Source: Vitrella brassicaformis CCMP3155
Lineage: Eukaryota; Protista; Chromerida
DNA: 64,000 nt
Assembly: GCA_001179505.1 (NCBI GenBank)
Contig: CDMY01001000.1
Location: forward strand, 124,001-188,000
Reading direction: 5' to 3'
This document shows positions 1-42,127 of this stretch, piece by piece. Position 1 is the stretch's first letter, and every line of letters begins with the position of its first letter. Position numbers and translations under genes: made by a program. The notes below the pieces were generated by a model, which made no database searches, had not been told where the DNA came from, and saw nothing but the letters and a program-made list of their open reading frames with translations.

Positions 1-2
1 AC

Positions 3-272
3 ATCGAGACCAAGACGACCGGTGGCACACTGATGATCTACCATGTGCTGTTCACGCCCGCCGAGCCCGCCGTCCCCATCAAGTTTCCCGACGACACGTG
101 GCATGCCGTCTCCGATTCGCCTACCTGCCAGGACCCCCAGTTGCTGTTCGCGTGCTGTGTGAGGGAGCGCATGAGGCCGACGTGCAGTGTGGACGAGTTG
201 CAAGGCGGGATGGCGAGATTCAAGAAAGCCGAGAGTGAGAGAGAACAGCTGTGCAAGGGAAGACCCCGTTGA
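3..272 (+). CDS. 3' end of an unknown protein (partial, runs off window start)
   Basis: Open frame from base 3 to the stop at 270-272 with non-repetitive, coding-like composition; no recognisable domain. Confidence 0.4.
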   Translation: METKTTGGTLMIYHVLFTPAEPAVPIKFPDDTWHAVSDSPTCQDPQLLFACCVRERMRPTCSVDELQGGMARFKKAESEREQLCKGRPR

Positions 273-1521
273 AGTGAGTGAGTGGAAGAGACACATGCAG
301 TGCAAGCGGACGACAGCATGGATGAGAGACAGAACAGACACCTGCGATGAATCGATTCTTGGTTCTGTCTGAATCTGCGTGGGAGGGAGATATTTGAGTG
401 AGGGACGGACGGAGGGACACTTCAAAGCCCCATTTTGAATTAGACAGGGGATGGGAGGCACAGCCCCACACACGAATGGCAGAGGCAGAACAGAGGAGGA
501 CAGATGAGCCCACGAGACCAGCCAGGACCGATCAGCCAGCTGGTCAGGCGAGACAGACTCGAGGCAGACACACAAAACACAGCCGGCCGGTCAGTCGTCC
601 AGACGGCCACACGCAGAGAGCGCGACCAACAAACAGACAGACAGACAGACAATGAGAAGAGAGAGGGGCGATGCACTCCCTCCTCTCCGATCAAACCCGA
701 TACACAGTCAGCCAGGCAAGAGGGAAGAGCCCCCGGCCACACACACGAGTTTATGACAAAAACAGCCACCCCCACATGTGTGTGTGTGTGGATTCTCTCC
801 TACTCTATGCTGTACCAAACGCAGCTCAACGTAAGGGACGTAGCTGTCTGGACGGAAGGTTGAAAGACGCTTCAGTCGCTGCTAGCCCACTGCATGTCTG
901 TCCAGTCGCTGCAGAGAAAGCAGCAGAGCAGATATCGGTTGTGGTGAGACAGAATTGAGTGAAGGATGTCTCGCCAACCAGAGTGAGTGAGGTGATGATG
1001 TTTGGAATGGATTGAGTGCCCTTTGAGTGACGCTTCAGATGCGCCAAATGCGGTCTGGCGCGGTGCCTTGGTTGCTGAGAACGGAGCGGCTGTTGTGGAG
1101 GGGTGACACTGTCAGTTGAGAATGAAAGAGAGCGAGTGAGGAGCTGCTGCTTGGTGTGTGTGAGGCTCTCAACTGGCCGGTTCACATTTGGTCCACATGC
1201 AATGGTCGAGATTCAGACCATTGCATCTCGAGATTCTCGACCATTACTACGGAGGCAACTCATTACTGGAGATATTTCATTTCATTTTCGGCGTCCTCAT
1301 GACCACAGTCAGAGTCCCCTCAACGCCTGATGAGCCCGCCTGGTGTCATGAAATCCGTGCCTGCCGTCGGAAATGAGTCTCCTCCATTGGCCGGCCTCGC
1401 CTGCGGGGGAGATGGCGAACAATTGATGGCGAGTGGGGGCGCGTTGAATTAAGGCGCCCTCACCCATGCCAGGCAAACACATTTCCATCACCACAACGCA
1501 CACACACGCACACAGACAGAC

Positions 1522-1553
<32 letters not shown>

Positions 1554-1779
1554 GAGGGACGTCTGTGTCTGTGTGTGTTGATGCGCAGTTCACGAGACCT
1601 TCTTCAGCCGCATTTGCGCCGACGAGGACAGCCAGTCCGACCAGACCAGGACGACGAATCATCTCCTTCACGTACACACACAAACTCTCGGGGGAGAGAG
1701 AGCGGAAGAAGGACAGAGAGGCACGCAGAGATACCCATAAGGATGTGTGTGCGAATGGGTGTAGTGACTCCTCTGCGAA

Positions 1780-2942
1780 ATGCAGCAAGTGCGGCCCCAT
1801 CTTCCGCTGGTGGTGGTGACGCAGAGGGAGGCGCCTCGGCGTCTGCTTAATCGGCACCGGCATCGGCATCATCGTCGTCTGCGCCAAGGGACAGCCAAGT
1901 GTGCCAGGTACATCCCTTGGCGGGGGGCATGTCCCTCTCCAGCCGCTCTCTCTCATCGTCATCTGCCTCTGCTGCTGATGACAGCAACAACACCAGCCAA
2001 AGGCCCCCTCAGCAGCAGCAGGCATCGTCATCCATGAGTCTGTTGTCCCGCAATCCCTTCCTGCCCGACAAAAATGCGTCCAGCAACAGCACATCACCCT
2101 GCCCACCAGCAGCTGCTGCTGCTGCCTCTTCTTCCGCCGCTGCCTCTTCTTCCGCCGCTGCCGCTGCCGCTGCTGCTGGTGGTGGTGGTGGTAGTGAACC
2201 GCCCCCTCTCATACCAGAGGGAAACGCCTCGGCGTCTGCTTCATCGGCAAGGGACAGCCAAGTGTGCCAGGTACGTGTGCACCTGACACCCAGAGGGACC
2301 GTCCGGATGGCTGTGAGTGTGCGTGAGTGCGTGTGTGTATGTGTTTGTGTGTGTGGCCGGTTTGTTCATCATCAGTCATGTCAGTACACCCTCTTGAGCA
2401 GCTCGTCAGCCCTGACTGCATCGTACTCACACACACACACACATAGTGCCTTCTCAGTGCGTCAACCAACCAATCGTGTGTGTCTCTCCCTCAGGTCCCC
2501 GAAGACCCACGACGAGGACCGCGGCGAAGGAGAGGAAGGTGGGCGAAAGGAGAAAGGAATGCATTGACACAGACTTTATGCACTCAGAACATTGTCTTGA
2601 TCGTGGCACGTACAGATCGCTGCTTGCATTTTATATTTGTGAGTCACTTCGTCCAATGGAGGAGTCCCGCCGGCCGATCCGGATCCTGAGGACGGCTCGG
2701 AGCAGTGGAGAGAGGGAAGGGGGGGAAAACGAGGAAGAGGGTAGGGACGTGTCCCACACCGTTAAGTGCGGCACTTTTCTCGTCCCCAGAGACGCCAGAT
2801 GGGTACCCATGCACATCCACCCACAGTCACCACACCACAGCAGAGAGCCATTGATGGACGTTATATCTCTCTGTTGTGTGTTGTGCGTAGGCCACGTGCC
2901 CTGCGTGTCAGAAGGTGTTCTGCCCCCACTGCTCCCGCGAGG
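1780..2942 (+). pseudogene. Degenerate 5' part of an RBR-type E3 ligase (Ala/Ser-rich exons, IBR half-exon)
   Basis: Duplicated exons ending RDSQVCQ|gt (~1836-1910 with an in-frame TAA, and ~2230-2270). Exon 2891-2940 encodes ATCPACQKVFCPHCSRE, an IBR C-terminal CxxC..CxxC. RING1 is not recoverable. Confidence 0.45.
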
Positions 2943-2999
2943 TATGCACACAGAGCTGCCACGGCACGTGGGAGAGTTGGAAGGCGCAGGCAGAGCACT

Positions 3000-3760
3000 C
3001 AAGATTGCCTTCCCTCCCTTGAAGCTATCACCAAGTGGAAGATCCGGATCCTCATGCCTCTGCTGATACCGCTGGTGATATGTGCCATACTGACCATCAT
3101 CTCGACCAACCGCAAATGTGTCCTGGAATGATGGCCACCACAGACGTACGTGTGTCAGCGGAATCAAGTGGGGAAAGCAGCCGTCCCGACGGCACACATT
3201 CGGCGTGAGGACGTCTCGGAGGAACGAGGAGAGGGGGATGGAGCGGGATCTGGGGATGGAGAGTGCCGTCAGACTCTGCAGCTGCTGCTCAGAGTCCGTG
3301 AAGGAGAAGACAAACGTAAGAGAGACCATGGAGAGGGAGAGAAGTCGTCGAGCCACCACATACAGCCGCTCCGCTACGAGACCCACTCGACCTGTGAGAC
3401 TTCCCCCCAGTGGTACGACGATGTCGGCTCGGATGAAGACTGGCCTTTGAGTGTGCTATGCTCCGTCTATCGCTCGCCGGCAATGTGCGGTCCCTCGACG
3501 TCACCTGACGGGGGTCGGGACGCCGCCTCGCCCGTCTCCTCTCGCCGGTAAGCCGTAGGTGCAGCCAGGCAGAGGAGATCACAGACAGCCATTCAGCAAG
3601 CCACGGACATCCCTTTGTCTCTCTTCTCGCTTTGTGTGTGTTTGGTGTGATGTGTGTGTGTGCGTGTGTGCAGGTTTGCTTACCTTCAGTCCCTGCCCGT
3701 TCTGCTGTTGGTCGGCGTGCTGCTGCCGTCGCCCTATATGGTATGCAGCGCATATGCGGT
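3000..3760 (-). pseudogene. Frameshifted antisense coding remnant of unknown family, lying between the duplicated IBR exons
   Basis: Protein-like stretches PVFIRADIVVPLGEVSQVEWV and LVAERLYVVARRLLSLSM...HVRLWWPSFQDTF lie in different frames. Confidence 0.25.
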
Positions 3761-4190
3761 CTTCTGCGCGGACCATTCTGTCTCTTCCTCTCCCTCCCTC
3801 TCTGTCTGGCTGTTTGTTTATGCGTGCAGCGCTCCACCTACATAATGCCGACGCCCTGCACACCAAGCTGGCTCTGTTTGCTGGCCTCTTTGGACTCTTA
3901 GCTCTGGCAGTGCCACTGCCAGTAGGCGCGTTCTGTGGAAAGGAGCGGGTGTGGTCCGGGGCTTGGAGATTCTGTTGGCGTTGTGGCGGTGGGCTGTTGG
4001 GTCGGGACGGACACGAGAATGGAATGGTGCGTGCTAGCAATCGGTGGGATTGTGTGCTCACTTTCTCGCTTTCTCGTCTGTCCGCAGTGGTAATACATGA
4101 GAGGAGCGACGGTCAGTTAGTGCCGCGTCATTCATGCATTCATTCATTCATTCATTCATATGCGTTCTCTCTGTTGCATGTCGTGCGCAG

Positions 4191-5377
4191 GCCACGTGTC
4201 TCGTGTGTCAGAAGGTGTTCTGCCCCCACTGCTCAGCGAGGTACGCACACGAAAGCACACAGGAACGTACACACGCACACATACACCCGCATCTTCTTCT
4301 TGTGTCTCTCTGTGTTTCTCTCTATGTCGGTGAAAACACGCAGGCGCATGACGGCTTGACGTGCGAGGAGGCTGCGGCGGCCTCGGCCGCTGAGGGCGAC
4401 AGGCAGCTAAGCTCGCTCGGAGAGCGAGAGGGATGGAAGGTGGGGCATCAACCACACACGGCACACACATGCCCTTCACACACACATCCGTGTGCGATGT
4501 TGTGTCTCCTTCCGTCAGCGGTGTCCGAGGTGCAGGACGATGTGCGAGAAGGCCAGGGGGTGCAACTTCATGAAATGCGAGGTGTGACCTATGCAAGACA
4601 TACACACACGTCTATCCATGTGGCTGCCTGCGTGTGTGTGTGTGTGTGTGTGCGTTCAGAGTTCGCAATGTCGCGGCCAGGGAGTCTACTTCTGCTACAT
4701 CTGTGGGGTACAACTCCCAATCGAGGAGATATGGATAAGTCACACTCACACATGAGAGGGGGAGACCACACACATACAAACAAAAGAGACACACACAGAC
4801 TCACACACAACCGATGCGATTCGAGGTGTGTGTGCGTGTCTGCAGCACTACAGCCACTTCCCGAATGGCCCGTACGAGTACTGTTGCGTGAATGTTCCCC
4901 AACCGGCCCGACTACCGCCGAGTGAACAACCAGGTACGGATGGATGTACGGCTGTCACCGGGCTGTGTGCGTATGTGCGACTGACCGTGTGTGTAGAGTT
5001 GCTGCCCAATTTGCCCCCCGACAACCCCGCCCCGCCTGATGCCCTTACTGACCCGCCCGCCTTCTCTGCCGCCTTCCCTGACGCCATCAACGACCCAGGT
5101 ACATACGATCAGTGTGTGTCTGTACTCGTTCGTGTATGTGTGTGTGTGTGTGTGTTGTGTTCAGGCATCCGACCACTGGGTCCCCTGGGCGCCCGGTCGG
5201 TCGCCGGCATACGGCGAGTGGGAAGAGACCTGCTCAACCAAAGGCTGCACAGTGAGTGGGTGGCTGGGATGGATGGATGGATGTACTGCTCTATGTGTAT
5301 GTGTGTATGTGTGACTGACCGTGTGTGTAGACGTGCTGCCTGGTGCTGACCCTCCGGCTGACCTGCCTGTCCCCTGA
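4191..5377 (+). CDS. RBR (IBR-RING2) E3 ubiquitin ligase, 3' part; 5' exons missing or degenerate
   Basis: Spliced exons: ATCLVCQKVFCPHCSAR | AHDGLTCEEAAAA | RCPRCRTMCEKARGCNFMKC | CRGQGVYFCYICG | HYSHFPNGPY. This fits IBR plus RING2 with the catalytic Cys in GCNFM. The spliced frame stops at TGA 5375-5377. Confidence 0.75.
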
Positions 5378-5419
5378 CCCTCCTGCTCCCCTCCCTGACC
5401 GACCGGCGCTTCAAGCGGC

Positions 5420-5674
5420 TTCGGTGGTGCACTTCACAGTCAATTACATGACAGGGGTGAGTGAGTGGCCGAGGGGATAACGACAATCATGGCCATCTCT
5501 CTCGTTTCTGTGTCTGTGTGTTTGTGTGTGTGCGTCGAATACCCTCCAGCCGGGGCAGGACATCTACGTCGTGGGGTCCACCGGCCCGCGCCGCCCCAAT
5601 GAGGTGGACGGCGGGGCACAACTGGACATGTTCACTTGATCTGCCACAACAGCGTAAGACACACACACACACAT

Positions 5675-5707
<33 letters not shown>

Positions 5708-5990
5708 TGTCTCCTCTTGTGCCGCGCCTGTCCATATTTGTGTATGTGTGTGTGTGTCGATTCAGCGATAGAATACAAGTTTCTTGTGAATGAGGGCGAC
5801 AGAGTCGAGTGGGAATTTGGGGAGAACCACGAGATGGGCAGGCAAGACCAAGACGGACCACACACACACACGCGTTGAGACACGACGTCTTTGTGTTGGT
5901 GTGTCTTCTTTGCTTGGCGAATGCAATGACTGCAGCTCGAGGTCTTGGAGGAAGACACAGAGGTGCTGGACTGGTGGGGGCAGGGCTGAG
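5420..5990 (+). pseudogene. Decayed CBM20 starch-binding domain exons directly downstream of the RBR ligase
   Basis: VHFTVNYMT | PGQDIYVVGS..AAPMRWTAGHNWTCSLDLP | IEYKFLVNEGDRVEWEFGENH. Paralogous, including introns, to 41070-41760. Carries a 23-nt deletion at ~5580 and a GT>AT donor loss after NHE. Confidence 0.8.
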
Positions 5991-6860
5991 GGGTGCGAGG
6001 GGGAAGAACATCAAGCTGTGATGGGGTGAGCTGCGTTTGATCACCCTGCAGTAGGAGAAGGGCTCCACACACGATTGCCTTCCTTTGATGCGCTGCTTTG
6101 TATAACAGCATGGCTGTCTACATTTTATAGTCGCGCGGCCTGTGGCTCACTTTTACCGAATCAATCGCCATCGACTCCGAATCAACCGGAGCTTGTGATG
6201 GAGTGGCCTGTGTGTGAAGCACTGCCATGTTTTTGTCATCGTCAGCCCACGGATACGCACTCGACCAGGTGAAGTCGCAACGGTTTCATCAGTCTCGCAG
6301 ACACGTGAAACTGTACATGTGCCTGTTTGCTGCAGGGGGTTCCTGCAGGGGAAGCCAGTCAAGCGGAAGCTCGGCAAGCACCACATACTTGTATGTGGTG
6401 CTTGCCGAAACGGTGTGTATGCGCTTAATTACCTGCTGCTGGTCTGCCTGCTTTCACACTGCATGGTTTGAGGCAGGCAGGCACGACGCGACGAGAGACA
6501 ACACCAGTGTGTGTGTGAATAATGGGAGGGAGAATGAGGCCTACACACAGCCATCTCGCTCGCTCGCTGCGAACCCGCCACACACACACACACAGGCCGA
6601 GGCTGATTGGTTGACCAGCTACTTGTGTGTGGCGATCTCTCCCCGTCTCCTAAGATTATTTATTGGCTCCAATCAGAAGACTCATTTACTCGACGGACGC
6701 ACAAACGAGTCACTTGTTGACTAATGGCGTGTGTCTCATATCATGAACACACACGCACACATCGACAGCCACACACTCACGCAGTTCGAGAGCCAGCTGG
6801 GTCGATGAGTCGTCTGGTCTCGCCCTCCCCATCGAGCACCGCCATTGAGCAGAACCAAAC

Positions 6861-39438: not shown

Positions 39439-41182
39439 TGTGTTTGTTCAGTGTGTTACCTCAGCAGCTTTGTGCAGTGCCTGCGCCTGACGGACCTGTC
39501 CAGCAGCAATGTGCTCCATTTCAAGCTCGAGAAGAAGGGGGGGAAAAAGAGTCAGGAGGCGTTCAACCCGAATCTGCTGGACGCTGTCAAGACGCTCATC
39601 GCAGAATTCCTCATCACCGAACGGTACGCACCCCCCCCACACACACATGTCCCTCCATCCCTCCGTTGTTTGTGCAGATCGTACCTCGATCCGAGTGACA
39701 TGCTCAAGACGCTTCCCGTGTTTTACGCCATCGGGCGGCAACAGGACGCCACTGAGGCCGGCAGATACATATTCGAGGCTCTTGGCGGACACGCAAAGGT
39801 ACCGTTCTCCCCTTTCAGAGGCGTGTTTGGTGGTCGGGTGGTCACCAAGACAAAGTGCAAGGAGTGCGGCAGGATCAGCGAGAGGCCTGAGAAGATATAT
39901 GACCTCGGACTAGCCGTCCCAACCGAAAAGGCATACAAGAAAATGTCGGAGAAAGGTGATCAGTACACACACACACACACACACACAGATGTACAGCGCA
40001 GTCTCCTGTCTCTCTGTCTCTCTGTCTCTCTGTCTCTCTGTTTGTGCGTCTGTGTGGCTGTATTTGTGTGACAAACAGGTCGCAAGCGTCTGTCGGTGCA
40101 GAAGTTGTTGGAGGACTGCATGAGAGTGGAGGAAATGAGTGGCAACAACGCCTATGCGTGCAGCAAGTGCCTCAAGAAGCAGCCGGCCACCAAGTGGCTG
40201 GAGATTCTCCACCCGCCCAAACACCTCTTCCTCTGCCTCAACCGCTTTGCCTGGGACAGGACCGACGGCCGCTCGAAGAAGCAGAAGACACCCGTCTTCA
40301 TCGACAAGACACTTGTCCTTAATGACGGATTCCTCTACGACCTGTACGCCACCATCATCCACACGGTAAGTGACTGGACACACACAAACACACAGACAGA
40401 GTGAGTGCATCGTGTGTGTGATTGTCTGTCTACAGGGGCCGACCTCCACCTCAGGCCACTACTACACGATTGGCCGCCGGTCGGAGGGCAGCGCACAGCG
40501 CCACAACGAGTGGTACTGCTTCGACGACTCGCGAGTCACGCCCGTCCCTCACACCGTCATCGACAAGATCGCTTCGTCCACTGAGAAAGACGACAGGCCA
40601 TATGTACTCTTCTACAGGTACGCACACTGCGAAAACACACAGAATGCACCATGGATGGATGTGACGTGACCGGCGCACTGTGCAGATGCCGAACGGCGTC
40701 CGTGTCTCCCGTGCCTGCAATTCCTCGGGGCCTCTACGACAAGGCAAGGGCCAAGGAGGAGGCAGCAATCAAGGAGATGACCGAGGCCGGCCGGCAGCAG
40801 CATGAGAAGGAGAAGCACGACAGGACTGAGGAGGCCAAGAAGGTAAGAGACGCCTTCTGCATCCATGTCGTCTGCGGATGACTGTGTGTGCTTGTGATCT
40901 GCAGCTCCGCCTCTCGCAAGAACAAGCGAGCGACGCCGAGCCTTCTCAAAGCCTCGACAACCCCCACGACATCGAAGACCGCGTGTACGAAGCCGCCATC
41001 CGACAGGCCATGCGGCGGGAGGCCATGCGGCGAGCGGACGTACCGCATGAGGGGCCGCTGAAGGGCTCGGTGGACTTTACCATCAACTACATGACAAGGG
41101 TGACTGAGTGGCTGGAGGATGAAGGCATGCATGGTCATCTCTCTCCTTTCTGCGTTCGTGTGTTTGTGTGTTTGTGTATTTC

Positions 41183-41213
<31 letters not shown>

Positions 41214-42127
41214 GCGTTGGATACCCTCCAGCCGGGGCAGAATTTGTATATTGTGGGGTCCATCGAGGAACTTGGGGAGTGGGACCCGGCCCGGGCCGCC
41301 CCAATGAGGTGGACCCCGGGCCACAACTGGACGTGCTGCCTCGACCTCCCGCAAGGGCGTAAGAGACACAGAAGACCACAGGAAGAGAGAGAGAGAGAGA
41401 GAGATGTCTCCTCCTGTGCCGCGCCTGTCCATGTTCGTGTATGTGTGTGTGTTTTTTTCCATTTGTGTGTCTGTGCCGTCGATCCAGCCATTGAATACAA
41501 GTTTCTCGTCAAGGAGGGGGACGGGGTGGAGTGGGAGTTTGGGGGGAACCACAAGGTGGGCAGACAAGAGCAAGACGGACCACACACACACATACACAGA
41601 CACATGGAGATTGAGACACGACCTCTTTCGTTGGTGTGTCTTCTTTGGTTGGTGAATGCAATGACTGCAGCTGGATGTCTTGGAGGAGGAAGACACAGAG
41701 CTGTTGGATTGGTGGGGGCAGGGCGGGGGCTGAGGGAGGAGAGGGGAGGGGAGGGGAGGGGGAGAGGGAGAGGGAGGAGGGCCCCTTCTCGACGCCGTCC
41801 GAGGTCGACCTGACGCTGCTGCCAGCCCGACATCGCGGCACCGGCATACGTGACCCTCTCAACCGAGCCGCGGCCGCATACCCCGCTTCCCACGCGAGCA
41901 CCAAGGTGGTCTCCAAGTCCGTCCAAGGCAAGGCTCCGTTCCACCCTCACTCATCCGCCACCCCCTCACCCAGAACAACCAGCAGCAGGACTCCGCCTAC
42001 AAGCCAAGAGAGAAGCCGCCCTGCCGCACATCGACCGCCGGCGCCATCGCGTCCTCTCCCGCAGCGCCGCATACAAGACGTCCGGCTGGCTGGCCATCTC
42101 TCTCTCTCTGCTTGTCTTCCTCGCTGA
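37828..42127 (+). CDS. IQ-IQ - CBM48-like - USP (peptidase C19) - CBM20 deubiquitinase
   Basis: IQ: IQAVFRGWSTRQK and VQRNFKRW. CBM48/AMPK-beta-like: IYFLWRG..RVE|ISGDFTAPNVW..PGNYHFKFTVDG..CNVISV. Cys box: GVRNHGS|.CYLSSFVQCL. QQDATE; CKECG/CSKC zinc ribbon. His box: SGHYYTIG..WYCFDDSRV. CBM20: VDFTINYMTR|PGQNLYIVGSIEELGEWDP..IEYKFLV..WEFGGNH. The exact 5' exons and last exon are less certain. Confidence 0.88.

What the first reader, a model, noticed from the sequence alone, without database searches (positions are those of the whole stretch)
4191..5990. RBR E3 ligase with a paralogous CBM20 tail: the possible writer for the glucan-targeted eraser
Seen: RBR exons continue into CBM20 exons whose introns and flanks match those of the USP gene (5420-6030 vs 41070-41760), so the module was copied at DNA level. 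Removing one C from the run at 5371-5374 restores a continuous RBR-linker-CBM20 frame. The CBM20 also has a 23-nt deletion removing EELGEWD and a dead donor. RING2 reads GCNFM, with an aromatic residue where most RBRs have His. Established: HOIL-1 (GCDW) also lacks that His and can ubiquitylate glycogen or oligosaccharides. Inference: an ancestral RBR-CBM20 and the USP-CBM20 form a ubiquitin write/erase pair on amylopectin; this copy is decayed.
Basis: partly seen in the sequence, partly recalled or inferred. Interest (0 to 1): 0.72.

Follow-up and report, generated by a model that had tools for sequence, protein, structure and literature searches.

The report
Decayed RBR ligase with dead CBM20 tail
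In the alga Vitrella brassicaformis a ubiquitin-ligase (RBR-type) gene once carried a starch-binding module copied at DNA level from the same stock as that of a nearby deubiquitinase gene; the module was kept by selection for a long time, but the gene is now a transcribed wreck with several real frame-breaking lesions, and no intact version was found anywhere.

Summary
Window 4191-5990 (Vitrella brassicaformis CCMP3155) holds IBR and RING2 exons, Pro-rich linker exons, then a four-exon CBM20 module. Exons and introns of that module align with the CBM20 tail of the USP gene (P0001) at 41067-41733.

All lesions are real. Contigs of two other studies match the window over 4168-5650, and a marine-sediment contig carries the CCCC+TGA (5371-5377) and the GT>AT donor (5834-5835). 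The 23-nt deletion (5580|5581) removes the LGxW motif, invariant in 60 of 60 outgroup CBM20s.

New here:
- A transcriptome run shows exons G and H spliced, with the exon H donor in use.
- dN/dS between the two CBM20 copies is 0.11, and about 0.25 for the RBR-tail lineage. The tail was a selected protein domain for most of its history, so the breaks are late.
- The RBR part also looks broken. IBR exon A is 1 nt shorter than its copy at 2891-2941, I recovered no canonical RING1, and the public model (P0151, 137 aa) starts inside RING2.
- No intact RBR-CBM20 was found among the 150 closest CBM20 proteins, in a word search or in metagenome scans.

The write/erase pairing is plausible history but untested. 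The GCNFM-to-HOIL-1 argument is weak. The scan had already noted the USP-CBM20 gene.

The parts
1929..2270 (+). Possible first coding exon (Met 1929, Ser/Ala-rich, ends ..RDSQVCQ before GT). Its last ~60 nt are duplicated at 1822-1911.
   Evidence: Open frame and donor; duplicate. Assigning it to this gene is inference.
2557..2638 (+). RING1-like exon P3 (ECIDTDFMHSEHCLDRGTYRSLLAFYI). Several expected zinc ligands are absent.
   Evidence: no Pfam or PDB support. Inference only.
2745..2802 (+). Exon P4. Frame +1 (..HTVKCGTFLVPRDARW) joins exon A2 in phase, but no upstream exon enters it in that frame.
2891..2941 (+). IBR C-half exon, copy 1 (A2, ATCPACQKVFCPHCSRE, 51 nt). It is in frame with exon B and gives CxxC-x4-CxxC-x4-H-x4-C.
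3830..4026 (+). Exon X2 (hydrophobic stretch, then ..FCWRCGGGLLGRDGHENGM). Putative IBR N-half of the second copy.
   Evidence: no family hit. Inference.
4191..4240 (+). IBR C-half exon, copy 2 (A, 50 nt). It is 1 nt shorter than A2, so the A-to-B splice shifts the frame and gives a stop in B.
   Evidence: 87% identical duplicate with its acceptor; frame test; DNA confirmed.
4344..4439 (+). Exon B: end of the IBR (AHDGLTCEE) and the helix/linker to RING2.
4519..4581 (+). Exon C: first half of RING2 (Rcat) with the catalytic Cys in GCNFMKC. The annotated CDS P0151 starts at the Met inside it.
   Evidence: PDB hits to ARIH1, HOIL-1 and parkin RING2; IBR_1 at E 0.056; P0151.
4660..4707 (+). Exon D: second half of RING2 (SSQCRGQGVYFCYICG).
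4846..4933 (+). Exon E: last RING2 ligands (HYSHF..YCC) and the start of the Pro-rich linker.
   Evidence: the splice 4933|4997 is seen in RNA-like run X14.
4997..5098 (+). Linker exon F (Pro-rich).
5165..5251 (+). Linker exon G.
   Evidence: the splice 5251|5331 is seen in X14.
5331..5456 (+). Chimeric exon H. Its 5' part and upstream intron are a tandem copy of intron E/F plus the start of exon F. It holds CCCC at 5371-5374 followed by TGA at 5375-5377, the present stop. From about 5424 it is the first strand of CBM20 (VVHFTVNYMTG), in another frame.
   Evidence: DNA confirmed in X1, X2 and X9; donor at 5456 used in X14.
5550..5653 (+). CBM20 exon I, with a 23-nt deletion between 5580 and 5581 (loss of IEELGEWD). 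This shifts the frame and gives a stop at 5637-5639.
   Evidence: DNA confirmed in X1 and X2.
5766..5835 (+). CBM20 exon J (5766-5833, IEYKFLVNEGDRVEWEFGENHE), followed by AT at 5834-5835 in place of the GT donor.
   Evidence: Pfam CBM_20 at E 0.0035; X9 contig 5813-6009 is identical.
5936..5989 (+). CBM20 exon K (LEVLEEDTEVLDWWGQG, stop at 5987-5989).
41067..41733 (+). The intact paralogous CBM20 module (four exon parts, three introns) at the 3' end of the USP gene, product P0001.

Best explanation
This is a transcribed, decaying RBR-type ubiquitin-ligase gene of Vitrella brassicaformis, and its last four exons are a dead copy of a CBM20 starch-binding module.

Shown: the module, with its three introns, comes from the same DNA stock as the CBM20 of the USP deubiquitinase gene 35 kb away. 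It is fused inside a linker exon that is itself a tandem copy of the preceding linker exon.

Inferred from codon evolution: after the copying, the RBR-linker-CBM20 reading frame was intact and the CBM20 was kept by purifying selection for most of the time since the two copies split. An RBR ligase tethered to storage glucan therefore very probably existed.

Shown: the tail was later disabled by three lesions.
- An extra C creates CCC-TGA in the linker.
- A 23-nt deletion removes the invariant LGxW sugar-binding-site motif.
- A GT-to-AT change destroys a splice donor.

Inferred: the ligase half is probably also defunct.
- One IBR exon is 1 nt short.
- No canonical RING1 was recovered, and the upstream exons I identified do not chain in frame from the start codon at 1929.
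- The longest annotated ORF is a 137-aa piece that starts inside RING2.

The RNA still made today has a stop codon well upstream of further splice junctions and should give at most a truncated, non-starch-binding product.
For: - Paralogy through introns.
- Lesions present in independent DNA (two culture studies and one sediment metagenome).
- Spliced RNA joining G to H, with the exon H donor in use.
- Frames.
- dN/dS 0.11 (Sd 27, Nd 17, 82 codons).
- 11 of 15 amino-acid changes fall on the RBR-tail lineage, which still leaves omega at about 0.25.
- Neutrality rejected.
- The deleted motif has Gly and Trp invariant in 60 of 60 outgroups.
- RING2 identity.
- Annotation P0151 starts mid-RING2 and ends at the TGA; nothing is annotated over window 272-4540 or over the CBM20 remnant.
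- Only one protein in 1.84 billion representatives has a near-identical CBM20 (P0001), so no third copy is annotated that could have been the donor.
Against: - The exon chain upstream of exon B is not shown by RNA. My single read-laying run gave only low-depth contigs (depth about 3.5), and they cover neither exon A nor the A2-to-B junction.
- P4(+1)-A2-B...H is an open frame, so a shorter, RING1-less or differently started product cannot be excluded.
- IBR and RING1 have no statistical family support exon by exon.
- Splitting synonymous changes equally between the lineages is an assumption.
- Aligned intron columns are much less diverged (13%) than fourfold sites (45%), which is only partly explained by intron indels. 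The history of the two copies may therefore be more complex than a single duplication, for example with gene conversion.
Confidence: 0.6

Rival explanations
1. Only the tail is dead. The RBR ligase is alive and simply ends at TGA 5375-5377, having shed a CBM20 it no longer needs. The upstream exons are spliced in a way I could not reconstruct, for example with A2 at 2891-2941 joined to B across a 1.4-kb intron that holds the degenerate copy.
For: The chain P4(+1)-A2-B-C-D-E-F-G-H is open, with complete IBR C-half and RING2 patterns. The locus is transcribed and spliced. RING2 keeps its catalytic Cys and zinc ligands.
Against: With canonical GT-AG sites I found no in-frame route from the start codon at 1929 into P4. 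The RING1-like exon lacks several ligands. The public, RNA-informed annotation found only a 137-aa ORF that starts inside RING2. Pfam sees nothing upstream.
Confidence: 0.2
2. Chance landing. A CBM20 segment was pasted behind the RBR stop or out of frame and was never part of its protein. The low dN/dS reflects divergence between the USP module and a different, functional donor gene that is now lost or unannotated.
For: No intact RBR-CBM20 was found in any database searched. According to earlier scan notes (untested here), Vitrella shuffles CBM20 and other cassettes often. Introns are better conserved than fourfold sites in aligned columns, which fits a more complex history.
Against: No third close copy exists among annotated proteins; only P0001 scores at or below 1e-30. 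None exists elsewhere in this window. The junction lies inside a coding linker exon, and one base fewer gives a seamless Pro-rich linker into the first CBM20 strand. The exon H donor is still used in the RBR transcript.
Confidence: 0.12
3. The fusion is still made through recoding or alternative splicing: +1 ribosomal frameshifting at the shift-prone CCC-UGA, or use of an AG at 5414-5415 as acceptor. Either would join the linker to the CBM20 frame.
For: Both routes restore the frame on paper. That CCC-UGA is a classic +1 slippery context is my own knowledge and was not tested.
Against: In either case translation stops at 5637-5639, because the 23-nt deletion shifts the frame and removes the invariant LGxW. 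The next donor is destroyed. The only G-to-H junction seen uses the 5331 acceptor.
Confidence: 0.03
4. Assembly or sequencing artefact: the homopolymer C-run, the 1-nt difference and the 23-nt deletion are errors in the reference.
For: The breaks include a homopolymer run, which is a classic error site.
Against: Contigs from two other studies match with 0 differences and 0 gaps over 2202-5650 and 4168-5650. An environmental metagenome contig matches over 5271-5475 and 5813-6009.
Confidence: 0.01

Closest known systems
HOIL-1 (RBCK1), the RBR ligase that ubiquitinates glycogen and maltodextrins (PMC9016349, PMC9834252)
   Same: RBR-type RING2 with a catalytic Cys. An aromatic residue (Phe here, Trp462 in HOIL-1) sits where most RBRs have the catalytic His. 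The glucan connection is implied by the CBM20.
   Different: HOIL-1 has no CBM20. Its sugar ubiquitination needs a C-terminal His510 and a Zn2/Cys6 binuclear cluster, whereas the Vitrella RING2 tail aligns as Ariadne-type. The Vitrella gene is broken and its activity is unknown.
Engineered FKBP-GFP-CBM20 plus FRB-HOIL-1L induced-proximity system (Nature 2026, PMC13345935)
   Same: An RBR ligase brought to alpha-glucan by a CBM20. The paper reports that this proximity is enough to ubiquitinate glycogen and send it to lysosomes.
   Different: The engineered system is a two-chain, drug-dependent construct in human cells. The Vitrella case is a natural single-chain fusion that no longer exists intact.
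Laforin-malin (CBM20 glucan phosphatase plus RING-NHL E3)
   Same: A CBM20 targets a ubiquitin ligase activity to storage polyglucan.
   Different: Laforin-malin is two proteins, the ligase is a RING and not an RBR, and the CBM20 is on the phosphatase.
RNF213, a giant E3 with an N-terminal CBM20 domain (PMC11549300)
   Same: An E3 ligase that carries a CBM20 fold in the same chain and modifies non-protein substrates.
   Different: RNF213 has a dynein-like AAA core and an RZ finger, not an RBR. Its CBM20 is thought to sense pathogens, not storage starch.
USP-CBM20 deubiquitinase of the same window
   Same: The same CBM20 module with the same three intron positions; 82% amino-acid identity over 83 comparable residues.
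   Different: It is intact (Pfam UCH plus CBM_20 at E 1e-18) and is attached to the opposite enzymatic activity.
ARIH1/HHARI and RNF216 RING2 (Rcat) domains
   Same: The best sequence match of exons C to E is the ARIH1 RING2. The language-model neighbours are IBR_1 and Rcat_RNF216 clusters.
   Different: Phe replaces the His at Cys+2. No canonical RING1 was recovered at this locus.

Membership tests
RBR (RING1-IBR-RING2) E3 ligases | RING2/Rcat: CxxC...GC(x)(H)..C...CxxC with a catalytic Cys | tested here: met
   Exon C matches ARIH1 RING2 at E 0.013, and also HOIL-1 and parkin RING2. P0151 aligns with the ARIH1 RING2 across exons C-D-E. Atlas neighbours are IBR_1 and Rcat_RNF216 clusters at 0.95. 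Pfam IBR_1 reaches only E 0.056 on the single exon, and P0151 has no Pfam hit.
RBR (RING1-IBR-RING2) E3 ligases | IBR domain (C6HC) | tested here: inconclusive
   The pattern CxxC-x4-CxxC-x4-H-x4-C is present when A2 (2891-2941) is joined to B. The nearer copy, exon A, is 1 nt short and breaks the frame. There is no Pfam or PDB support exon by exon.
RBR (RING1-IBR-RING2) E3 ligases | Canonical C3HC4 RING1 that binds the E2, in frame with the rest | tested here: not met
   The only RING1-like exon (2557-2638) has CxxC only if joined to the exon ending at 2270, and it lacks several ligands. No in-frame chain with canonical splice sites was found. There are no family hits. I could not run a profile search of a joined model.
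CBM20 starch-binding domain (Pfam PF00686) | Homology to CBM20 | tested here: met
   68 of 83 residues are identical to the CBM_20 of P0001, which scores E 1e-18. Exon J alone hits CBM_20 at E 0.0035, below the gathering score.
CBM20 starch-binding domain (Pfam PF00686) | Uninterrupted domain with the LGxW motif (site-1 Trp) | tested here: not met
   The 23-nt deletion removes IEELGEWD, whose G and W are invariant in 60 of 60 outgroups. There is a frameshift, a stop at 5637-5639 and a dead donor.
HOIL-1-like glucan-ubiquitinating RBR | Non-His aromatic residue at catalytic Cys+2 | tested here: met
   GCNFM here aligned with GCDWI of HOIL-1. W462 is described in PMC9834252.
HOIL-1-like glucan-ubiquitinating RBR | Zn2/Cys6 binuclear cluster and a C-terminal catalytic His (H510) | tested here: not met
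   After CYIC the sequence reads GHYSHFPNGPYEYCC and aligns with the Ariadne-type tail. It is followed by a long Pro-rich linker, not by a C-terminus.
HOIL-1-like glucan-ubiquitinating RBR | Oxyester ubiquitination of glucans | not testable with these tools
   This needs biochemistry, and no intact protein is available.

The most novel reading that the evidence does not exclude
Ancestors of Vitrella had a working single-chain RBR-CBM20 ligase that ubiquitinated storage starch directly, or proteins on its surface. It would have been a natural counterpart of the engineered CBM20/HOIL-1L system, opposed by the still-intact USP-CBM20. The pair was later reduced to the eraser alone, or the writer role passed to the other CBM20-RING or CBM20-F-box genes that the scan notes in this genome.
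Probability: 0.2. Interest if true: 0.7.

Novelty: new variant of a known kind. Interest (0 to 1): 0.36.

Why it matters
Ubiquitination of glycogen by an RBR ligase has only recently been shown, and artificial CBM20-mediated proximity is reported to be enough for it (PMC13345935). A natural RBR-CBM20 fusion kept by selection would show that evolution tried the same solution in an alga with cytosolic starch. It would also point to the neighbouring USP-CBM20 as its antagonist.

The value here is limited. The gene is dead and its ligase half cannot be reconstructed with confidence. No intact relative was found, so nothing can be assayed directly.

The finding is useful in three smaller ways:
- It is a dated example of DNA-level domain shuffling followed by decay.
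- It suggests what to look for in other chromerids.
- It corrects the public annotation, where P0151 is a fragment of a pseudogene-like locus.

Tried and rejected
- **Word search, exons A+B.** The stop-free piece 4101-4922 gave no hit, so no annotated protein of 150-480 aa contains these exons.
- **Pfam, exon by exon and on all long stop-free upstream pieces.** Only fragment-level hits came up. PDB searches of the IBR and RING1 pieces gave only chance hits.
- **Alignment of 65 hits.** It failed internally, so I used 46.
- **Metagenome scans.** The scan with P0151 was handicapped because 4 of its 6 peptide patterns spanned exon junctions. A degenerate DNA pattern for GCNFMKCE gave one contig, L002, which is a chance match: GC 0.38, no RBR context and no CBM20.
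- **Recoding and alternative splicing.** I considered programmed +1 frameshifting at CCC-UGA and an alternative acceptor at 5415|5416. I rejected both because of the downstream deletion and stop.
- **A GC donor to rescue exon A.** I rejected it by eye: poor consensus, and it would give non-canonical IBR spacing.
- **X14 depth bins.** Bins next to CA/GT microsatellites are inflated by unrelated contigs, so I did not use them as expression evidence.
- **Introns better conserved than synonymous sites.** This apparent paradox shrinks to non-significance if intron gap columns are counted as differences. It stays in the notebook as only partly explained.
- **Joined exon models.** Exons were searched by reference one at a time, and the only spliced product searched was the database protein P0151. 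Exons were joined only inside local scripts, for frame arithmetic and the codon comparison.
Full report
**Source and setting.** The window is from Vitrella brassicaformis CCMP3155, contig CDMY01001000.1 (227,604 bp); window position equals record position minus 124,000. The evidence is that the only database protein matching the linker exons is NCBI's "unnamed protein product [Vitrella brassicaformis CCMP3155]" (P0151), encoded at record 118540-139377 with flanks. Earlier scan notes had given the organism as a lead. The DNA is about 57% G+C with short exons and CA/GT-rich introns.

**Anatomy.** The exons on the + strand, all with AG/GT borders, are:
- B 4344-4439: end of an IBR (AHDGLTCEE) and a linker.
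- C 4519-4581 and D 4660-4707: RING2 (RCPRCRTMCEKARGCNFMKCE, then SSQCRGQGVYFCYICG).
- E 4846-4933: the last RING2 ligands (HYSHF..YCC) and the start of a Pro-rich linker.
- F 4997-5098 and G 5165-5251: linker.
- H 5331-5456, I 5550-5653, J 5766-5833 and K 5936-5989: the end of the linker and the CBM20 module.

In the RBR frame, exon H runs into TGA at 5375-5377 immediately after CCCC at 5371-5374. The first CBM20 strand (VVHFTVNYMTG) lies in the same exon one frame away. One C fewer gives a seamless Pro-rich linker into it.

**Paralogy.** Positions 5424-5989 align with 41067-41733, the 3' end of the USP gene, through all three introns (blastn E 2e-110). Homology starts inside exon H and ends about 20 nt after the stop codon. 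This is a DNA-level copy of the module, not a retro-copy. Relative to the USP copy, the tail lacks 23 nt between 5580 and 5581. That removes IEELGEWD, shifts the frame and gives a stop at 5637-5639. It also has AT instead of the GT donor at 5834-5835. The USP product P0001 (898 aa) is intact, with Pfam UCH at 382-695 and CBM_20 at 803-886 (E 1e-18). The intron before exon H and the first bases of H are a tandem copy of intron E/F plus the start of exon F. Exon H is therefore a chimera of a duplicated linker exon and the start of the CBM20.

**Are the lesions real?** Yes.
- Logan contigs of two further studies match the window with 0 differences and 0 gaps: X1 over 2202-5650, and X2 over 2202-4123 and 4168-5650.
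- Contigs of a marine-sediment metagenome (X9) match 5271-5475 (the C-run and TGA) and 5813-6009 (the dead donor) without difference.
- X9 does not cover the 23-nt deletion.

**Is it transcribed?** Run X14 behaves as a transcriptome. One contig joins 4931|4995 (a 63-nt GT..AG intron). It also keeps 4741-4845 of the preceding intron, so it is partly unprocessed. Another contig joins 5251|5331 and ends exon H at 5456, with four more letters that do not continue into 5457. The linker exons, the stop and the start of the CBM20 relic are therefore on one spliced RNA that still uses the exon H donor. Depth is low (about 3.5). Exons I and J were not seen, which proves nothing. The stop lies upstream of further exon junctions, so such RNA could be a target of nonsense-mediated decay; that is inference.

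**Was the tail ever functional?** I compared 82 codons of the two copies in the USP frame.
- There are 27 synonymous and 17 non-synonymous differences: pS 0.52, pN 0.088, dN/dS 0.11. Amino-acid identity is 68 of 83.
- Against 60 outgroup CBM20 domains, the USP residue is the commoner one at 11 of the 15 differing sites and the RBR-tail residue at 4. The tail lineage evolved faster, but omega is still about 0.25 if synonymous changes are split evenly.
- Neutrality is rejected at p about 1e-8 for the pair, at 3e-4 against omega 0.5, and at about 3e-4 for the tail lineage alone.

A module that landed out of frame and was never translated should not look like this. The simplest reading is a long period as a selected protein domain, followed by recent breakage. 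The deletion removes the LGxW motif, whose Gly and Trp are invariant in 60 of 60 outgroups. From my own knowledge, this Trp belongs to binding site 1 of CBM20.

One caveat applies. Aligned intron columns differ by only 13% against 45% at fourfold sites. Counting intron gap columns as differences raises the intron figure to 33%, which is not significantly different. The history may still be more complex than one duplication. Nine of the 14 fourfold differences are G/C transversions, in line with strong GC3 preference (GC3 0.73-0.81).

**The ligase half.** RING2 is well supported.
- Exon C aligns with the RING2 of ARIH1 (E 0.013), HOIL-1 and parkin.
- P0151 aligns with the ARIH1 RING2 across exons C-D-E.
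- The language-model neighbours are IBR_1 and Rcat_RNF216 clusters at 0.95.

Upstream, the picture is poor.
- IBR C-half exon A (4191-4240, 50 nt) is an 87% copy, acceptor included, of A2 (2891-2941, 51 nt), and it is one base short. The A-to-B splice therefore shifts the frame.
- A2-B gives a canonical CxxC-x4-CxxC-x4-H-x4-C, and P4(+1)-A2-B...H is open.
- With canonical splice sites I found no in-frame route from the start codon at 1929 through the RING1-like exon (2557-2638), which also lacks several zinc ligands.
- Pfam and PDB searches see nothing there.
- The public annotation has only P0151. It starts at the Met inside RING2 and ends at the TGA. Nothing is annotated over window 272-4540 or over the CBM20 relic.

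I therefore think the whole locus is decaying. The alternative, that only the tail is dead, stays open at about 0.2.

**Search for an intact RBR-CBM20.**
- An exhaustive HMMER search used a stop-free reference carrying three exons of the intact module. Only P0001 scored at or below 1e-30, and the next hits are 31-49% identical.
- None of the 150 best hits has a RING2 motif.
- None of the 46 longest has an IBR domain. Their partners are amylases, laforin-type phosphatases, glucanotransferases and others.
- The word search with the CBM20 region of P0001 found only two glucanotransferases.
- Two metagenome scans gave nothing related.
- The paper library holds no natural RBR-CBM20 fusion.

These searches are incomplete.

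**The HOIL-1 argument.** It is true that HOIL-1 has Trp462 where other RBRs have the catalytic His, and that it ubiquitinates sugars (PMC9834252; PMC9016349). That activity, however, depends on His510 at the very C-terminus and on a Zn2/Cys6 cluster. The Vitrella RING2 tail is Ariadne-like and continues into a long linker. An aromatic residue at Cys+2 alone does not predict oxyester chemistry.

The idea itself is timely. A 2026 paper reports that drug-induced proximity of a CBM20 and HOIL-1L is enough to ubiquitinate glycogen in cells (PMC13345935). RNF213 is another E3 with a CBM20 (PMC11549300).

**Method notes.** Exons were joined only in local scripts, for frame arithmetic and the codon comparison. 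The only spliced product searched was the database protein P0151.

**Verdict.** The locus is a real, transcribed relic of an RBR-CBM20 fusion. Its CBM20 was once under selection and is now dead, and the ligase half is probably dead too. The architecture is a new variant, not described in the papers searched, but only as a fossil. The scan had already found the intact USP-CBM20 partner on this same window. Interest is moderate to low.

Noticed in passing
window 1822-1911 vs 2215-2274; 2866-2951 vs 4166-4250; 4938-5006 vs 5275-5340: There are three local duplications. Two of them, 2866-2951/4166-4250 and 4938-5006/5275-5340, each copy the 3' end of an intron together with the start of the next exon (80-87% identical). 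The third, 1822-1911/2215-2274 (91-97% in two blocks), copies the 3' end of an exon with its GT donor. The locus seems to grow by tandem duplication of intron-exon junctions, like the duplicated splice acceptors noted elsewhere in this genome by the scan.
   Followed up: partly
window 5369-5380: The present stop sits in CCC-TGA-C, a context I know as prone to +1 ribosomal frameshifting, and the +1 frame is exactly the CBM20 frame. It is moot here because of the downstream deletion, but worth a look in intact Vitrella genes with similar linkers.
   Followed up: partly
window 5424-5989 vs 41067-41733: Fourfold-degenerate sites differ at 45% (9 of 14 changes are G/C transversions) while aligned intron columns differ at 13%. 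Unique intron stretches of 40-60 nt near the 3' splice sites are 90-93% identical. Intron indels explain only part of this.
   Followed up: partly
window 1-272 (L001 3467-5733): The window starts in the last exon of an annotated 550-aa gene whose product carries PF09994, a T6SS_Tle1-like catalytic domain (a phospholipase-type family better known from bacteria).
   Followed up: no
window 2202-6194 (run X9): A 2025 marine-sediment metagenome holds contigs identical or nearly identical to this Vitrella locus (2 substitutions in about 2 kb). Vitrella, or a very close relative, is therefore present in that environment.
   Followed up: no
window 3675-3741 and 3830-3960: Two hydrophobic, transmembrane-like stretches (..LPVLLLVGVLLP.. 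and ..LALFAGLFGLLALAVPLPVGAF..) lie in open frames between the two IBR-exon copies. I could not tell whether they are exons of this gene, of another gene, or noise.
   Followed up: no
L002 1183-1206 (reverse strand of JAAUXV010188231.1): A low-GC metagenome contig encodes ..VGCNFMKCEC.. by chance or as an isolated exon. There is no CxxC before it and no CBM20 on the contig.
   Followed up: yes
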